DNA of 64,000 nt from the sequence record NC_023719.1; one strand, written 5' to 3'. The notes under the pieces are model-generated. The model saw only the letters and a list, made by a program, of their open reading frames with translations. It had not been told where the DNA came from and made no database searches. Positions 4,754-34,826 of this stretch are shown in pieces; within the stretch, counting starts at the first letter, position 1; every line of letters starts with the position of its first letter. Made by a program: the position numbers and the translations under genes.

Positions 4754-5851
4754 TTGAGTAGAATTAAAAAAATTAATAATAATAAAAGTCAATCTCTAGA
4801 TTATACTTTAAATGTAGATAATAATGAAGAGTATGGTAATAATGTGGATCCTGAAATTGATTGGACAACTGATGTTGACCTTCAAATGGATCCATCGAAA
4901 AATGATTATAATAAGGGGTATACTATGGATCCATATCAAATGAGATATTATGCTAATAGAAATATATTGCATGAAGTTAAAGCCGGTGAAAACTACGCTA
5001 CAATAGCTGAAAAATACTTTGGACATAAAAATTATGCTAGTAAGTTAGTAGAAATGAATAATGAGTTATCTAATAAAATCTTGAAGCCTGGCATGATGCT
5101 AATTGTAGGCAAAAAACCAGCAAAGGTTGCAGCGAAAGAAGTTAGAGATATCACTTATACTTCTGATAATTTAGCAAAGGAAATTATCACAATTTGGAGT
5201 CAAGTAGATGGACCTCTTCAAGATTTCTTTAATGCATTTACAATGAATAAAATGACAAATGAAATGAAGCAGCAGATAGCAAGTACTCTGAATGAATGGG
5301 GTTACAATGTAATCCCGCATTTAGAAGATAGAACTCCAAGATATGCAGCTAAGAAAGAATTGTTTAATAAGATTGCTAAAATATCTAAAGAGAAAAACAT
5401 GAAAAGAGTTTTCTCTGAATTAAACAACATCTGTCCTGATTCAAAAGTTGTATCTTCAATTTTAAGAGATATTGAAGAATTAAGTCAAAATGGAGTTATT
5501 GTTAAGAAGGCAGAAGCTCAAGGTTTAGTTGATTATTTTAAACAAATTTTCCCTGATGATTACGCTGTATCGTTGGTTGATATAACTCTTAATAAACCTA
5601 ATACTAGTTTTGAAGAATTTGATGAAAACCAAGAAATTTCAGATGAAGCTTTAGATCAAATGGAAAAAATGGATAGTGGTAATCAAGACCCAATGAGTAA
5701 ATCACCAAATGACGGCGGTTTAAACGGTTATGATTTCACTACTCACATGAGATCTGATGGTCCGGGTGGAGTTGCACCTACATCATTTGAAACTGGGCCA
5801 TTTAATGTATATAGAGCGAGCGTTAAAAATACTCGCTTAAAAAAAAAGTAA
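4754..5851 (+). CDS. LysM-domain putative virion protein
   Basis: LysM HEVKAGENYATIAEKYFG...LKPGMMLIV; start moved from 4706 to TTG 4754 (RBS GGAGGT, MSRIKK); ends at an A9 run plus TAA. Confidence 0.7.
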   Translation: MSRIKKINNNKSQSLDYTLNVDNNEEYGNNVDPEIDWTTDVDLQMDPSKNDYNKGYTMDPYQMRYYANRNILHEVKAGENYATIAEKYFGHKNYASKLVEMNNELSNKILKPGMMLIVGKKPAKVAAKEVRDITYTSDNLAKEIITIWSQVDGPLQDFFNAFTMNKMTNEMKQQIASTLNEWGYNVIPHLEDRTPRYAAKKELFNKIAKISKEKNMKRVFSELNNICPDSKVVSSILRDIEELSQNGVIVKKAEAQGLVDYFKQIFPDDYAVSLVDITLNKPNTSFEEFDENQEISDEALDQMEKMDSGNQDPMSKSPNDGGLNGYDFTTHMRSDGPGGVAPTSFETGPFNVYRASVKNTRLKKK

Positions 5852-5889
5852 CCGCTGATTCTATAGAAGATATTCCAGTTTATTTAGTT

Positions 5890-6240
5890 TTGGATGCACT
5901 TTCTAAAGCGTCGCATAATGTTTCTGATTTATTGAATAGAAAACTAGATGTTCCTCCAGTACCAATTGAAACAATTAGAAAACAAGATAACAACAAGGCG
6001 AGTGAAAATGAAAAAATACCTAGTGGGTATAGAATGCCTGTAAATATTGTTGAAGTTTATAGTATTTGGAAAATATTTGTTGAATATGAAAATAATGAAG
6101 TTAACGAAGCTTATGTAGTTATAAGTGCTGATAATATAATTGATGGTTACAAAAAAGGTGAATGGCAACGAGTAGAGTATCGTGGTTTTTATCTCACTTT
6201 TGAAGAAGCAAAAAATGAAATCAATGGATATTTGGAGTAG
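5890..6240 (+). CDS. Hypothetical protein; probably the -1-frame C-terminal extension of the LysM protein
   Basis: No RBS; its frame is open back through the A9 run at 5839-5847. Confidence 0.55.
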   Translation: MDALSKASHNVSDLLNRKLDVPPVPIETIRKQDNNKASENEKIPSGYRMPVNIVEVYSIWKIFVEYENNEVNEAYVVISADNIIDGYKKGEWQRVEYRGFYLTFEEAKNEINGYLE

Positions 6241-15696: not shown

Positions 15697-16071
15697 ATGA
15701 ATGATAATAAAAATTTAGCAATTATTTGTGATATACGAAATAGGACTCCAATTGGAGTAATATGTTCTTGTCCAGTTACAGGCGATCTAGCTTTCTCAAC
15801 AGAGAATAAAATGTTAGAAGAAACATTAGAAATAATTCTTAGCAGTAAATCATTTCTTTATTCAAAAGAAAAAGTAAATGAACAATCAATGATAAATAGA
15901 GAAGAAATCAATCCCAATGATCATTATTACTTGATGGCAATTGATTTCTCTCTGCCATTTCCTTGGAGAATACTAGGAATAACTTCTGTAGAAGGGGATA
16001 TAGAACAAATAGTAGGAAATGCCATTGAAATGCTAAAAGAAGGAGGAAACAATTTTGAAACGATTGATTAA
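15697..16071 (+). CDS. Hypothetical protein
   Basis: ORF with RBS AAGGTG. Confidence 0.5.
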   Translation: MNDNKNLAIICDIRNRTPIGVICSCPVTGDLAFSTENKMLEETLEIILSSKSFLYSKEKVNEQSMINREEINPNDHYYLMAIDFSLPFPWRILGITSVEGDIEQIVGNAIEMLKEGGNNFETID

Positions 16072-16369
16072 AAAGTCTAACCATGTTGAACCATCTATTC
16101 ATAATGAGGTGGAAGACAAGATTATACATCCAAACACAAATATAAATGAGAATCAAAACCCATCATTTTTATTAACAAGACAACTATTTGCAGATACTGC
16201 TTTCACGCCTACTGCAACTATTAGTTATCAATTTGCTAGAAAAATTGAAAATGGTGAGTTTAGTCACCTTGGTTCTATTGAAGAAGCAAGGGGTAATTGG
16301 TCAGAATGGTTGAACGCTTTAGATAGTTTTTTAGAAGAATCAGGTCACAAAGGTTTAAAAAAAAACTAA
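16055..16369 (+). CDS. Hypothetical head-associated protein (MKRLIKKS tag), 0-frame part
   Basis: RBS GGAGG; ends at an A9 run plus TAA. Confidence 0.6.
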   Translation: MKRLIKKSNHVEPSIHNEVEDKIIHPNTNINENQNPSFLLTRQLFADTAFTPTATISYQFARKIENGEFSHLGSIEEARGNWSEWLNALDSFLEESGHKGLKKN

Positions 16370-19739: not shown

Positions 19740-19771
19740 AAGCTATAGGTAATTAGACCTATAGCTTTTTT
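19740..19771 (+). terminator. Rho-independent terminator
   Basis: AAGCTATAGGT-aattag-ACCTATAGCTT plus T run. Confidence 0.85.
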
Positions 19772-19864: not shown

Positions 19865-20611
19865 ATGTACAAAATAGCTATTTGTGCTGGTCATGGTTTC
19901 AACACTCCTGGTAAGAGAACTCCAGATGGTGAAAGAGAATGGAGCTTTAACAATAAGTTAGTTGTTGCTTTCGTTAACACTATGAATCAGTATGAGAATG
20001 TTACTGTTAAGCGTTATGATGATCCAACGGGTAAAACTGACGTGCCTTTAATTACTCGTACTAATGGGGCAAACGCTTGGGGAGCAAACATCTACATTTC
20101 ATTCCACCACAACGCTAATACTGCTAAATGGGGTACTTGGACAGGTGTTGAAACTTTCTACTATCCAGGTTCTACGACTGGATTGAACTTAGCTAAAGCT
20201 ATTCACCCAGCAGTTGTTCAATCTTATGGATTGAAAGATAGAGGCGTTAAGTCTGGAAATCTTCACATCGTTAGAGAAACAAAAATGCCAGCTATTTTAA
20301 TCGAAGGTGGATTCATGGATTCTACTATCGATATTAAAAAACTTAGAAGCGACGCTGTATTAAAAGCTGCTGGTGAAAACATTGCTCATGCTGTAGCTAA
20401 GTACGCTGGTTTAAAGAAAAAATCTTCTACTTCTACTCCTAAACCGCCAACTCCTACTACTCCAAATGCTGCAACTTACACTGTAGTTAAAGGAGATACT
20501 CTGTATGGAATTTCTCAAAAATTTGGAATCAGTGTCGATACTATCAAATCATTAAATGGTTTGAAAACTAATACTATCTCTATTGGGCAGGTATTAAAGG
20601 TAAAAAAGTAG
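19865..20611 (+). CDS. Endolysin: N-acetylmuramoyl-L-alanine amidase (Amidase_3) plus LysM
   Basis: AGHG, GEREW, YISFHHNA, AILIEGGF amidase motifs; C-terminal LysM YTVVKGDTLYGISQKF. Confidence 0.92.
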   Translation: MYKIAICAGHGFNTPGKRTPDGEREWSFNNKLVVAFVNTMNQYENVTVKRYDDPTGKTDVPLITRTNGANAWGANIYISFHHNANTAKWGTWTGVETFYYPGSTTGLNLAKAIHPAVVQSYGLKDRGVKSGNLHIVRETKMPAILIEGGFMDSTIDIKKLRSDAVLKAAGENIAHAVAKYAGLKKKSSTSTPKPPTPTTPNAATYTVVKGDTLYGISQKFGISVDTIKSLNGLKTNTISIGQVLKVKK

Positions 20612-20868
20612 AAGATGTAACTGCTGATAGTTTCTATCGAGTTTTTGTTAATGGAAAACAGGTAGGCGCATTTTCAGTTAAAGAGAATGCTTATGAAGAC
20701 GGTTGGAAACAATATAATTCTGGAAAAACAGATGCTTATTTAGTAGAACCAAATGGTAGTAAATATACTTTCAACGCTCACCAATCTGAAAACCCTAACA
20801 AAAAACAAGACGAAACTAATTCTACAAAAAACCCTATTTTAGGTAAATCAGTAGTTACATCTAGTCAA

Positions 20869-21534
20869 ATGGTAACTCTTGTAAAATCAAAAAACCCTAA
20901 TGCTAAAAATATTGAAGAAATTGCTGAAGCCTTCTTAAAGGTTGGCGAAAAATACGGACTTCGTGGAGATATTGCATTTTGTCAGTCAATTATCGAAACG
21001 GGTTGGTTTAGATTTGATGGCGGTACTGCGGTTACTCCAGATCAACATAACTATTGCGGACTTGGAGTTACGAGTACGGGTATTAAAGGAGCTGTATTTG
21101 CCACTATTAAAGATGGTGTAACTGCACAAATACAACATCTTTATGCTTATGCTACTAAATCGGCACTACCAGCTGGAGAAACTCTATTGGATCCAAGATT
21201 CCAATACGTTACAAGAGGTATAGCTCCAAATTGGGAAGATTTAAGTAATAGATGGGCTATGAATGCTAATTATGGAACTCAAATCTTGAATATGTATAAT
21301 CAATTATTACAAGTTCCTGCATCTAATACTTCTCCTGAAAAACCAAATACACCAAAACCTAAAGAAGAAAAAAAGGATGTTCTTTTTACACATTCAGAAA
21401 TCAACAATAAACAATATGCTTCTGTCGTAATTGACGGAAAAGGATATATAGCGGTTTCAGATGTTGCAGATTTACTTGATTTAAAAGTAGTATTTGACAA
21501 GGTTACTAAAGAAATTATCTTCATTAAAAAATAA
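20869..21534 (+). CDS. Glucosaminidase (GH73-like) domain; probably reached by -1 shift from the amidase
   Basis: IAFCQSIIETGWF, HNYCGLG, WAMNANYG motifs; frame open from 20572; no RBS at ATG 20869. Confidence 0.8.
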   Translation: MVTLVKSKNPNAKNIEEIAEAFLKVGEKYGLRGDIAFCQSIIETGWFRFDGGTAVTPDQHNYCGLGVTSTGIKGAVFATIKDGVTAQIQHLYAYATKSALPAGETLLDPRFQYVTRGIAPNWEDLSNRWAMNANYGTQILNMYNQLLQVPASNTSPEKPNTPKPKEEKKDVLFTHSEINNKQYASVVIDGKGYIAVSDVADLLDLKVVFDKVTKEIIFIKK

Positions 21535-21570: not shown

Positions 21571-22092
21571 ATGGAACAAGTTATTGATTTAATCATACCG
21601 TTCATTGCTTTAGCTTTTCTTAGTGTGATGATTGATAAGTTCACTTTGTTTTTAGAGCAAATTGTTCATAAAATCCCACACTTCCCAGATTACTTTGAAT
21701 GGTATACCGCTTATGCTGTAGTATTAATTATAAGTACTATGGTTTGTTGGCAGGGTGATTTTAGATTTTTTGACTATTTAAATCTTTATTTCCCTGTTTG
21801 GTTAGATTATTTTATGAGTGGTTTAGTTATTAGTGGAGGAAGTGCATTTGTTAGAACTCAATTCAGTATGATAGAAGCAATCCCTTCTACTGTTACTGGC
21901 ATAGCATCTTCATTTACTAGACTTTTACCAGGTAGAAAAGATAGCAATGTAGATCAATCAAATAACAATTCAACTGCTCCTAATAAAAATAGCCAACCTA
22001 ATGTAACTCCAAACTATACTGAGGAAGAGTATTATCCTCCAGCAACTGAAGAAATAGATACTAACTCAAATCGTTATACTGATGATATTTAA
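21571..22092 (+). CDS. Membrane protein, holin-like/lysis-associated
   Basis: About 3 hydrophobic helices; between lysin and holin; RBS GAGAGGTG. Confidence 0.5.
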   Translation: MEQVIDLIIPFIALAFLSVMIDKFTLFLEQIVHKIPHFPDYFEWYTAYAVVLIISTMVCWQGDFRFFDYLNLYFPVWLDYFMSGLVISGGSAFVRTQFSMIEAIPSTVTGIASSFTRLLPGRKDSNVDQSNNNSTAPNKNSQPNVTPNYTEEEYYPPATEEIDTNSNRYTDDI

Positions 22093-22108: not shown

Positions 22109-22468
22109 ATGATGAATGAATTATTATCTTCAATTTTAAGTGATCTTTTAATTCTTGTAACTACAGTTGGTGCAAGCTATTTAGTATTATTCCTTAAAAA
22201 TAAACTTGGTGTTGAAAAGTTAAAGAAAATTCAACAAGAATCTGAATTATTAAGAGAAGTGGTTGAAGCTGGTGTTAGATATGCAGAACAACGTTTTAGT
22301 AGTGGTGAGAAATTAGATGAAGCTGCTAAATGGATTTCTGAAAGACTTGGCGAAAAAGGAATTAACGCTACTCCTGAAGAAATTAACGGTTTAATTGAGT
22401 CTACTGTACGTCGTTTTAAAGATGAATTTGGTAATGAATGGGCAAACGCAGTAAAAGATGAAAAATAA
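22109..22468 (+). CDS. Phage holin (LL-H-like)
   Basis: N-terminal TM helix; V.AGVRYAEQ...G.EKLDEA..I.GLIESTV pattern; RBS AGGAGG. Confidence 0.75.
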   Translation: MMNELLSSILSDLLILVTTVGASYLVLFLKNKLGVEKLKKIQQESELLREVVEAGVRYAEQRFSSGEKLDEAAKWISERLGEKGINATPEEINGLIESTVRRFKDEFGNEWANAVKDEK

Positions 22469-22472
22469 TTTC

Positions 22473-22500
22473 AAAGAGAGCTTATTGCTCTCTTTTTTTA
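22473..22500 (+). terminator. Rho-independent terminator
   Basis: AAAGAGAGC-ttatt-GCTCTCTTT plus T run. Confidence 0.8.
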
Positions 22501-34096: not shown

Positions 34097-34516
34097 ATGT
34101 GGGTAGATCCAAAAAGTTTAGAAGAAAATAAAGTGTTGATTAGCACTCTATTATCTGAACTTGATAAAGGCAATAATAAGAGAGCTAAGAAACTCGTAGA
34201 TCATTTACTTGAAAAGAATTGGACAGTTAATATTAATTACATTGAACAAGAAAAAAAGAAAAGAAAAATCAAAAACTTAGATGTTGATTTTGAAGCTATA
34301 CTCTTAGGTAAATTCAAGGGTGACTATCATTTAACTACAAAGTGTAAGAAATACGTAGTAAGAATAACTAGTCAGAGGGCTGTCTTTTGGAAAATGGAAA
34401 AGTGGGTTAAATTAGGGGAATTTTTATTTGAAGATATTGAATTAACAGAAAAAGGCATTAAAGTTGGAATTGTAAAGATAGAGGTAGATGACAATGAACA
34501 AGAAACGGGAAGTTGA
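34097..34516 (+). CDS. Hypothetical protein
   Basis: RBS AAGGTG. Confidence 0.5.
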   Translation: MWVDPKSLEENKVLISTLLSELDKGNNKRAKKLVDHLLEKNWTVNINYIEQEKKKRKIKNLDVDFEAILLGKFKGDYHLTTKCKKYVVRITSQRAVFWKMEKWVKLGEFLFEDIELTEKGIKVGIVKIEVDDNEQETGS

Positions 34517-34826
34517 ATTGATATTAGAAAAGAAAAATCCTAATTTCTTCGAAATCTATTTTTTTGCTAAAAAGTTTAAATTGCCGCAAAAGAAATATGA
34601 TACTTATCCCCATATTCATATGAATAATAAGACAAATGATGTTATGGTTGATTTTAATATACTTCTTACAGTTTCTTATAGAGAGAGTTCAAATATATAC
34701 CGCATTTTTGGTGGAACATTTAGTCTTGCATATCCAAGTGAAGTATCTAGAGAAGAACTTGATTTTTGGTTACCTAGACTAGTTATTGAAAGTGAAAAAT
34801 TTATTTTAAAAAATAATCTTAGTTAG
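34494..34826 (+). CDS. Hypothetical protein
   Basis: RBS GAGGT; start moved to ATG 34494. Confidence 0.5.
   Translation: MNKKREVELILEKKNPNFFEIYFFAKKFKLPQKKYDTYPHIHMNNKTNDVMVDFNILLTVSYRESSNIYRIFGGTFSLAYPSEVSREELDFWLPRLVIESEKFILKNNLS

What the first reader, a model, noticed from the sequence alone, without database searches (positions are those of the whole stretch)
19865..21534. Frameshift-linked bifunctional endolysin: amidase-LysM, or amidase-LysM-X-glucosaminidase
Seen in sequence: the 258-nt gap between the amidase stop (20611) and the glucosaminidase ATG (20869) is coding in the glucosaminidase frame (open from 20572). It reads KKVEDVTADSFYRVFVNGKQVGAFSVKENAYED..., which resembles the YRV..GAF..K.NA cell-wall-binding motif of Bacillus amidases. 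That frame has no ATG/GTG/TTG between 20572 and 20869, and ATG 20869 has no SD. An SD-like GCAGGT lies about 10 nt before the heptamer (dnaX-like spacing), and a weak hairpin CTGATAG-TTT-CTATC(G)AG starts about 13 nt after it. Inference: a -1 shift at A_AAA_AAG yields a ~555-aa two-enzyme lysin alongside the 248-aa amidase. The classic phage -1 frameshift is in tail chaperone genes, so a lysin example would be unusual.
Basis: partly seen in the sequence, partly recalled or inferred. Interest (0 to 1): 0.75.

Follow-up and report, generated by a model that had tools for sequence, protein, structure and literature searches.

The report
Frameshifted two-form phage G endolysin
The lysis enzyme gene of the giant Bacillus phage G is built so that most ribosomes stop after a small wall-cutting enzyme, while some slip back one base and add a second enzyme; the public record already annotates this, and here it proves conserved in six related phages.

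Summary
The window is Bacillus phage G, bases 1-64000. An Amidase_3-LysM gene (19865-20611) ends on a dnaX-type lysine heptamer. The -1 frame then stays open for 308 codons. It encodes an unnamed 60-residue module, a glucosaminidase and a short tail. It has no start codon for 86 codons and no ribosome-binding motif.

GenBank and RefSeq already annotate a joined CDS 19865..21534, and UniProt holds the 556-aa product (G3MB92). The finding is therefore a rediscovery.

New here:
- The same junction occurs in six independent metagenomic relatives (49-77% amidase identity).
- It is absent from a syntenic relative that lacks the glucosaminidase, and from about 55 other amidase relatives.
- The startless stretch is under purifying selection (dN/dS 0.16-0.31).
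- Single-ORF lysins with the same domain order exist.
- The conserved Met at 20869 is an internal domain residue.

Sequencing error, pseudogene and independent initiation are poorly supported. Whether the ribosome or RNA polymerase slips is unresolved, and no trans-frame protein has been observed.

In passing, gp5/gp6 (4754-6240) has the same design. It is conserved in a relative and is not annotated as joined.

The parts
19740..19767 (+). Terminator-like hairpin after gp21; upstream limit of the lysis transcription unit
   Evidence: 11-bp stem followed by a T run
19865..21534 (+). Whole endolysin gene (long form, two reading frames). The public record annotates it as a joined CDS with a 556-aa product.
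   Evidence: frames checked
19865..20611 (+). Short form: 248-aa Amidase_3-LysM endolysin made by standard decoding
19874..20398 (+). Amidase_3 catalytic domain (aa 4-178 of the short form)
   Evidence: E 2.8e-35
20477..20605 (+). LysM wall-binding domain (aa 205-247)
   Evidence: E 2.8e-17
20572..20611 (+). Zone where both reading frames are open. Any change of frame must happen here. In the relatives this zone is 16-49 nt.
20635..20790 (+). X module in the -1 frame: a small beta-beta-alpha-beta-beta domain with no Pfam or PHROG family, found almost only in peptidoglycan hydrolases
20926..21306 (+). Glucosaminidase (PF01832) catalytic domain in the -1 frame
   Evidence: E 3.2e-10
21370..21531 (+). 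C-terminal segment of about 50 aa after a Pro/Lys-rich linker; no family match
   Evidence: no Pfam hit
21571..22092 (+). gp24, a conserved neighbour with hydrophobic segments. It lies between endolysin and holin in every G-like locus.
22112..22468 (+). gp25 holin (Phage_holin_6_1)
   Evidence: E 8.6e-14
22473..22495 (+). Terminator-like hairpin closing the lysis unit

Best explanation
This is one lysis gene decoded in two ways. Standard translation of 19865-20611 gives a complete small endolysin, Amidase_3 plus LysM, of 248 aa. A fraction of the decoding events change to the -1 frame on the lysine heptamer that ends this form. Translation then continues through the X module, a linker, a glucosaminidase domain and a short C-terminal segment. 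The result is the 556-aa two-enzyme form, so the two forms are made in a fixed ratio from one mRNA.

In phage G the run is short. It is flanked by an upstream 4-nt SD-like match and by a downstream structure of unusual stability. I therefore think ribosomal -1 frameshifting of the dnaX type is the main route. In relatives with the longer run, RNA-polymerase slippage may contribute or dominate.

Shown: the sequence anatomy, its conservation, and the coding constraint on the startless stretch. Inferred: that the shift happens, by which machine, and at what rate.
For: - Anatomy: heptamer in phase, stop, 308-codon open -1 frame. No start codon for 86 codons and no RBS motif before 20869.
- Public annotation: joined CDS and 556-aa product.
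- Conservation: seven lineages have the same junction (G, L002, L003, L004, L005, L086, L087). Amidase identity to G is 49-77% and glucosaminidase identity 59-67%. The -1 frame is open for 236-338 codons, and 8-113 of these are startless. The A runs differ between lineages by exactly three bases, so the frame relation is kept.
- Localisation: in L002 and L003 both frames are open over only 16 nt, which confines the shift to the run.
- Negative controls: L088 has G-like synteny but no glucosaminidase gene. It lacks the in-phase heptamer, and its -1 frame closes after 3 codons. About 55 other amidase relatives have neither feature.
- Coding constraint: the startless stretch has 0 stops against 3-17 in the other frames, and dN/dS is 0.16-0.31.
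- X module: it is internal in single-ORF wall hydrolases.
- Single-ORF analogues: amidase-to-glucosaminidase lysins in one ORF exist, and one lies next to the same holin family. PHROG 435 spans both halves in order.
- Met 20869: M/L/I in 118 of 120 homologues, and more than 20 residues inside the protein in 100 of them.
- Transcription: no promoter-like or terminator-like site lies in the gap on the + strand.
- Literature: this heptamer is the most shift-prone one tested in E. coli and is the dnaX site. Its shiftiness depends on a single lysine tRNA, which about half of bacteria have (PMC5009743). The published phage G tRNA list has no tRNA-Lys.
Against: - No protein evidence exists. Virion proteomics in PMC12484599 detected gp22 but not gp23. 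Those samples were virions, not infected cells.
- That paper treats the two ORFs as separate, similar endolysins and does not mention a shift.
- The upstream SD-like element is only a 4-mer. It is present at that spacing in 3 of 7 lineages and overlaps conserved Gly-Gln-Val codons of LysM.
- Downstream structures are significant in only 3 of 7 lineages and differ in shape and spacing. In phage G the outer stem starts closer to the heptamer than is usual for a stimulator.
- The host's lysine tRNA set was not examined.
Confidence: 0.8

Rival explanations
1. The frame change is made by RNA polymerase, not the ribosome. Slippage on the A run would give a minority of mRNAs in which the two frames are continuous.
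For: Four of the seven lineages (L002, L003, L086, L087) carry a run of nine A. They have no significant downstream structure (z +0.8, -1.3, -1.5, +1.6) and no SD-like match at the dnaX spacing. Runs of more than seven A are implicated in programmed transcriptional realignment, for example Thermus dnaX with nine A (PMC3711429, PMC5009743).
Against: Phage G, L004 and L005 have the shorter run, below the length cited for transcriptional realignment. All three have strong downstream structure (z -3.8, -2.7, -5.1). The terminal G that makes the heptamer the most shift-prone for ribosomes is kept in 7 of 7 lineages, and a pure polymerase mechanism does not need it.
Confidence: 0.15
2. These are two separate genes. 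The glucosaminidase starts on its own at ATG 20869 and gives a 221-aa protein, and the gap is untranslated.
For: Gene callers call it that way in G and its relatives. Free-standing glucosaminidases of this size exist. PMC12484599 lists two ORFs.
Against: - There is no RBS motif before the first in-frame start in any of the seven lineages.
- The gap is under purifying selection and has no stops.
- It encodes a module found inside other hydrolases.
- The Met is a conserved internal residue.
- The heptamer co-occurs with the downstream ORF in 7 of 7 lineages and is absent where that ORF is absent.
A low level of internal initiation in addition to the shift cannot be excluded.
Confidence: 0.05
3. 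It is a sequencing or assembly error in a homopolymer, and the real gene is a plain single ORF.
For: Homopolymer runs are error-prone. Single-ORF homologues exist.
Against: Seven assemblies from different samples and projects share the same frame relation, and their run lengths differ by a multiple of three. Phage G was resequenced in several laboratory lineages at 500x or more and still yields two ORFs.
Confidence: 0.02
4. It is a decaying gene or a DNA-level phase switch. The downstream part would be a dead remnant, or would be expressed only in genome variants with another run length.
For: Homopolymers can vary during replication.
Against: The downstream frame is intact and constrained across lineages that have diverged to 49-77% identity. 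None of the seven assemblies is in the continuous-frame state.
Confidence: 0.03

Closest known systems
E. coli dnaX tau/gamma -1 programmed ribosomal frameshift
   Same: Same slippery heptamer type. An SD-like match lies about 10 nt upstream and a stable structure lies downstream in phage G. Two products share one N-terminus (PMC5009743, PMC3711429).
   Different: In dnaX the shifted product is the shorter one, whereas here it is the longer one. The stimulators here are weak or lineage-specific, and the zero-frame stop follows the heptamer directly.
Phage lambda gpG/gpGT tail-assembly chaperone frameshift
   Same: A -1 shift near the 3' end of a phage gene adds a C-terminal domain to a minority of molecules, so the ratio is set by decoding (PMC5009743). 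The same laboratory deposited the phage G record.
   Different: The function is lysis, not tail assembly. The heptamer differs, and the added part is a second enzyme. Phage G has its own tail-chaperone frameshift elsewhere.
Thermus thermophilus dnaX transcriptional slippage on nine A
   Same: Four relatives carry a run of nine A at the junction (PMC3711429).
   Different: Phage G itself has the shorter run. Nothing here shows transcript heterogeneity.
Two-product endolysin genes made by internal in-frame starts (for example mycobacteriophage Ms6 lysA, PMC3111421)
   Same: One lysin gene yields two proteins that share a part.
   Different: In those genes the second product is an N-terminally shorter version in the same frame. 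Here it is a C-terminal extension in another frame.
Single-ORF bifunctional Gram-positive lysins (PHROG 435; P0005, P0013, P0026, L021/L017)
   Same: Same order: amidase, wall-binding module(s), glucosaminidase. One lies next to a Phage_holin_6_1 holin.
   Different: They are encoded in one continuous frame, so only the long form can be made.

Membership tests
-1 programmed ribosomal frameshift signal, dnaX type | X_XXY_YYZ slippery heptamer in phase with the upstream frame | tested here: met
   same motif type in 7 of 7 lineages
-1 programmed ribosomal frameshift signal, dnaX type | -1 frame continues as constrained coding sequence that cannot be reached by initiation | tested here: met
   0 starts, 0 stops, dN/dS 0.16-0.31; no RBS motif
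-1 programmed ribosomal frameshift signal, dnaX type | Upstream internal SD-like stimulator at about 10 nt | tested here: inconclusive
   A 4-mer of the window's RBS motif is present at that spacing in G, L004 and L005 only. It overlaps conserved LysM codons.
-1 programmed ribosomal frameshift signal, dnaX type | Downstream stimulatory RNA structure | tested here: inconclusive
   z is -3.8, -2.7 and -5.1 in the three short-run loci and between -1.5 and +1.6 in the four long-run loci. Shape and spacing are not conserved.
-1 programmed ribosomal frameshift signal, dnaX type | Trans-frame protein observed | not testable with these tools
   Only virion proteomics is published: gp22 was seen and gp23 was not.
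-1 programmed ribosomal frameshift signal, dnaX type | Host decodes AAA and AAG with a single lysine tRNA | not tested
   Host genome not examined. The published phage tRNA list has no tRNA-Lys.
Programmed transcriptional realignment on A runs | Run of more than seven A (PMC3711429) | tested here: not met
   Phage G, L004 and L005 have the shorter run. Four relatives have nine A.
Programmed transcriptional realignment on A runs | Transcripts heterogeneous in run length | not testable with these tools
   No transcript data at hand.
Modular Gram-positive phage endolysin, bifunctional (PHROG 435) | Amidase catalytic domain plus wall-binding domain | tested here: met
   (Amidase_3, LysM)
Modular Gram-positive phage endolysin, bifunctional (PHROG 435) | Second catalytic domain (glucosaminidase) in the same polypeptide | tested here: inconclusive
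   The domain is present and PHROG 435 covers both halves in order. Here they are linked only through the frame change.
Modular Gram-positive phage endolysin, bifunctional (PHROG 435) | Placed in a lysis cassette with a holin | tested here: met
   (gp25 holin); same order in relatives
SPOR domain (PF05036) as the identity of module X | Match to the SPOR profile | tested here: not met
   No SPOR hit at E <= 1 for the X stretch of G, L002 or L003, and none among X-bearing proteins.
SPOR domain (PF05036) as the identity of module X | SPOR-like fold | tested here: not met
   The confident model (pLDDT 90.6) has the order beta-beta-alpha-beta-beta. No PDB match at E <= 0.001.

The most novel reading that the evidence does not exclude
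G-like jumbo phages use a portable recoding cassette, consisting of an A run, a G and a stop, to hang optional C-terminal modules on LysM-bearing proteins. They use it at two or more genes: the endolysin and gp5/gp6. The cassette exists in two interchangeable versions. One has a short run with flanking stimulators and would be ribosomal. The other has a long run without stimulators and may rely on polymerase slippage. This would make the endolysin the first conserved, ratio-setting frameshift described for a lysis enzyme.
Probability: 0.35. Interest if true: 0.6.

Novelty: already known. Interest (0 to 1): 0.4.

Why it matters
Endolysins are studied closely, both for how phages time lysis and as antibacterial enzymes. 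Known ways of getting two lysin forms from one gene are internal starts and separate genes. A conserved frameshift that sets the ratio of a one-enzyme lysin to a two-enzyme lysin would be a different solution.

It appears in the databases only as an unexplained join. The comprehensive recoding review I searched has no occurrence of endolysin, amidase or peptidoglycan in the 300,000 of its 449,034 characters that are held. The newest phage G paper treats the two ORFs as separate genes.

There is also a practical point for annotation. Gene callers split this gene in all six relatives. They lose the X module and report a start codon that is really an internal residue.

Tried and rejected
- The metagenome scan with the amidase and the viral-contig scans gave no further G-like junctions. 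They gave only controls and single-ORF analogues. L082, a gp24 relative, has neither enzyme within 3.5 kb.
- DNA for P0040's contig was not available.
- The PDB sequence search with the glucosaminidase part found nothing at E <= 0.001.
- The PDB fold search with module X gave only chance-level hits to photosystem subunit D. The viral library returned phage G's own entry and uncharacterised proteins.
- Pfam and PHROGs have no family for X, for the C-terminal segment, for gp24 or for the gp6-frame product.
- The 2020 structure paper on phage G (PMC7316594) is not held. The supplements of PMC12484599 are not held. Peptide-level data could therefore not be checked.
- Literature searches for a lysin frameshift found none. 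One search was malformed.
- Rejected: amber or ochre read-through as the route to the long form. The zero frame closes again within a few codons of the stop, and the glucosaminidase is in another frame.
- Rejected: near-cognate initiation inside the overlap zone. In L002 and L003 that zone is 16 nt of run.
All queries were single-frame pieces.

Full report
**Identity of the window.** The region matches Bacillus phage G (JN638751 / NC_023719) at 100% identity and at the same coordinates. RefSeq annotates two CDS here. One is a short "endolysin" at 19865-20611. The other is a two-piece joined "endolysin" at 19865-21534. UniProt G3MB92, "Peptidoglycan hydrolase [Bacillus phage G]", has 556 residues. 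That is the sum of the 248 codons of the short form and the 308 codons of the open -1 frame.

I found no paper that discusses it. The 2025 re-analysis of phage G (PMC12484599) lists gp22 and gp23 as two similar endolysin ORFs. It reports gp22, but not gp23, in virion proteomics. It mentions a programmed frameshift only for the tail chaperone. A large recoding review (PMC5009743) has no occurrence of endolysin, amidase or peptidoglycan in the 300,000 of its 449,034 characters that are held.

**Check of the observation.**
- The short form carries Amidase_3 (aa 4-178) and LysM (aa 205-247).
- The downstream frame is the -1 frame, open from 20572 to 21534. It holds a Glucosaminidase domain.
- The heptamer named in the finding lies in phase in the last codons of the short form.
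- The 86 codons between the short form's stop and ATG 20869 contain no ATG/GTG/TTG and no stop. The other two frames of that stretch have 6 and 13 stops.
- I derived the ribosome-binding motif from the window itself, using 48 long-ORF starts. GGAGG, AGGAG, GAGGT and AGGTG are 20-44 times enriched. None of these lies before 20869.
- The upstream "SD-like" element shares only the 4-mer AGGT with that motif.
- The bare heptamer is no more frequent than chance, 70 copies against 77.5 +/- 8.7 expected. Its context is exceptional.

**Comparative test.** The nearest homologues of the downstream frame are gene calls of 224-244 aa that begin at or near the equivalent of Met 20869. Their contigs show phage G synteny: a gp21-like gene, amidase-LysM, a gap, glucosaminidase, a gp24-like gene, a Phage_holin_6_1 holin, a decoration-like gene and the capsid gene. 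Two more such loci came from homologues of the amidase.

All six relatives (L002, L003, L004, L005, L086, L087) share the following features:
- The amidase form ends on the same heptamer type, followed directly by a stop.
- The glucosaminidase lies in the -1 frame, which is open for 236-338 codons.
- The first 8-113 of those codons have no start codon.
- No RBS motif precedes the first in-frame start.

These relatives are 49-77% identical to G in the amidase and 59-67% in the glucosaminidase. They come from different samples. Three lineages, including G, have the shorter A run and four have a run three bases longer, so the frame relation is the same in all of them. In L002 and L003 the two frames are open together over only 16 nt, which confines any shift to the run.

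**Negative controls.** L088 has G-like synteny but goes straight from amidase-LysM to the gp24-like gene. It has no in-phase heptamer, and its -1 frame closes after 3 codons. About 55 further amidase relatives without a downstream glucosaminidase do not carry the heptamer at the stop. Their -1 frames stay open for 1-103 codons.

**Is the gap translated?** Among G, L002 and L003 the startless stretch has 51-63% amino-acid identity and dN/dS of 0.16-0.31. Its core, module X, has the following properties:
- It occurs in only 18 clusters among 1.84 billion representative proteins, and nearly always inside the protein.
- Of the 22 aligned sequences scanned (the query, those 18 proteins and three further X-bearing proteins), most are wall hydrolases: Glucosaminidase in 10, Amidase_2 in 6, Amidase_3 in 5, GH25 in 3.
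- In P0026 it sits between LysM and Glucosaminidase in one ORF. In P0040 the order is LysM, X, Glucosaminidase. In P0028 it is N-terminal with its own start.
- Its AlphaFold model is confident (pLDDT 90.6) and has the order beta-beta-alpha-beta-beta.
- It has no PDB match and no SPOR signal.

L004 and L005 lack X and have a 39-44-codon linker instead. L087 has an 8-codon link.

The Met at 20869 is M, L or I in 118 of 120 homologues. It lies more than 20 residues inside the protein in 100 of them. It is a domain residue, not a start signal.

**Single-ORF analogues.** Several proteins carry the same domains in one frame:
- P0005 has Amidase_3 followed by Glucosaminidase (505 aa) and lies next to the same holin family.
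- P0013, L009 and L015 are similar.
- A circular 153.7-kb viral contig (L021/L017) encodes Amidase_2, SPOR, LysM and Glucosaminidase in one frame.
- PHROG 435 matches the amidase and the glucosaminidase pieces at successive profile positions.
The long form is therefore a natural architecture.

**Mechanism.** The common denominator in 7 of 7 lineages is the dnaX-type heptamer with its terminal G. The literature ranks this heptamer as the most shift-prone for ribosomes when one lysine tRNA reads both codons (PMC5009743). The published phage G tRNA list has no tRNA-Lys. The host's tRNA set was not examined.

The stimulators are not uniform across the lineages:

| Lineages | Downstream fold z | AGGT about 9-10 nt upstream |
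|---|---|---|
| Short run: G, L004, L005 | -3.8, -2.7, -5.1 | present |
| Long run: L002, L003, L086, L087 | +0.8, -1.3, -1.5, +1.6 | absent at that spacing |

This three-against-four split is suggestive only, because the lineages are related. The AGGT also encodes conserved LysM residues. Runs of more than seven A are associated with polymerase slippage (PMC3711429), so the long-run lineages may use that route.

I rate a programmed change to the -1 frame at this site at about 0.8. Within that, I rate the ribosomal route as the main one in phage G at about 0.65.

**Surroundings.** Terminator-like hairpins at 19740-19767 and 22473-22495 bracket the unit endolysin, gp24, holin. No promoter-like or terminator-like site lies in the gap on the + strand.

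**A second site.** The window-wide scan found gp5 (4754-5851; 365 aa; weak LysM hit). It ends on the same design, and the -1 frame is open from 5827 to 6240 through the annotated gp6 (6034-6240). RefSeq does not join them. A relative, L085, has gp5 58% identical, the same ending, and a 131-codon -1 frame that is 65% identical over its whole length. dN/dS is 0.18 both before and after the annotated gp6 start. Unlike the endolysin gap, this gap contains in-frame start codons, so initiation is not excluded.

- Notes 1 and 2, and the printed output of some scripts, give positions of the shift site in the window and in relatives. Note 2 also repeats the finding's sequencing-error alternative.
- The RBS 5-mers used as a filter were typed from general knowledge. 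They were only afterwards derived from the window, which confirmed them.
- No sequence joining the two frames was built, saved or searched.

Noticed in passing
window 4754-6240 (+): gp5 (4754-5851, with a weak LysM hit) ends on the same run-plus-stop design as the endolysin. The -1 frame is open from 5827 to 6240 through the annotated gp6 (6034-6240). RefSeq lists two separate genes. In relative L085 the same ending and a 131-codon -1 frame are conserved (65% identity, dN/dS 0.18 before and after the gp6 start). This is a likely second, unannotated frameshift, although the gap has in-frame start codons.
   Followed up: partly
window 20635-20790 (+): Module X is a rare domain, found in 18 clusters among 1.84 billion proteins and restricted to peptidoglycan hydrolases. 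Its predicted beta-beta-alpha-beta-beta fold is confident, and it has no Pfam, PHROG or PDB relative. It is probably a wall-binding module.
   Followed up: yes
L088:2779-4314: A phage with G-like synteny has only amidase-LysM (324 aa), followed directly by the gp24-like gene and the holin. It has no glucosaminidase and no slippery heptamer. The second enzyme is therefore dispensable in this lineage.
   Followed up: partly
window 21571-22092 (+): gp24 is a protein with hydrophobic segments and no family match. It always sits between endolysin and holin in G-like loci and may be a second membrane component of the lysis cassette.
   Followed up: no
L021:1396-3204 and L017:2-553: A 153.7-kb viral contig whose ends overlap by 127 nt (a circular assembly) encodes Amidase_2, SPOR, LysM and Glucosaminidase in one long ORF that runs across the contig ends.
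   Followed up: partly
window 16037-16369 and 34488-34826 (+): Two further open frames end with A-rich in-phase heptamers (ending in C or T, not G) and are followed by -1 frames open for 111 and 81 codons. These may simply be neighbouring genes in that frame.
   Followed up: no
window 19865-21534; PMC12484599: The 2025 re-annotation of phage G splits this gene into two ORFs (ps604, ps605) and does not carry over the join of the GenBank record. Gene callers do the same in all six relatives.
   Followed up: yes
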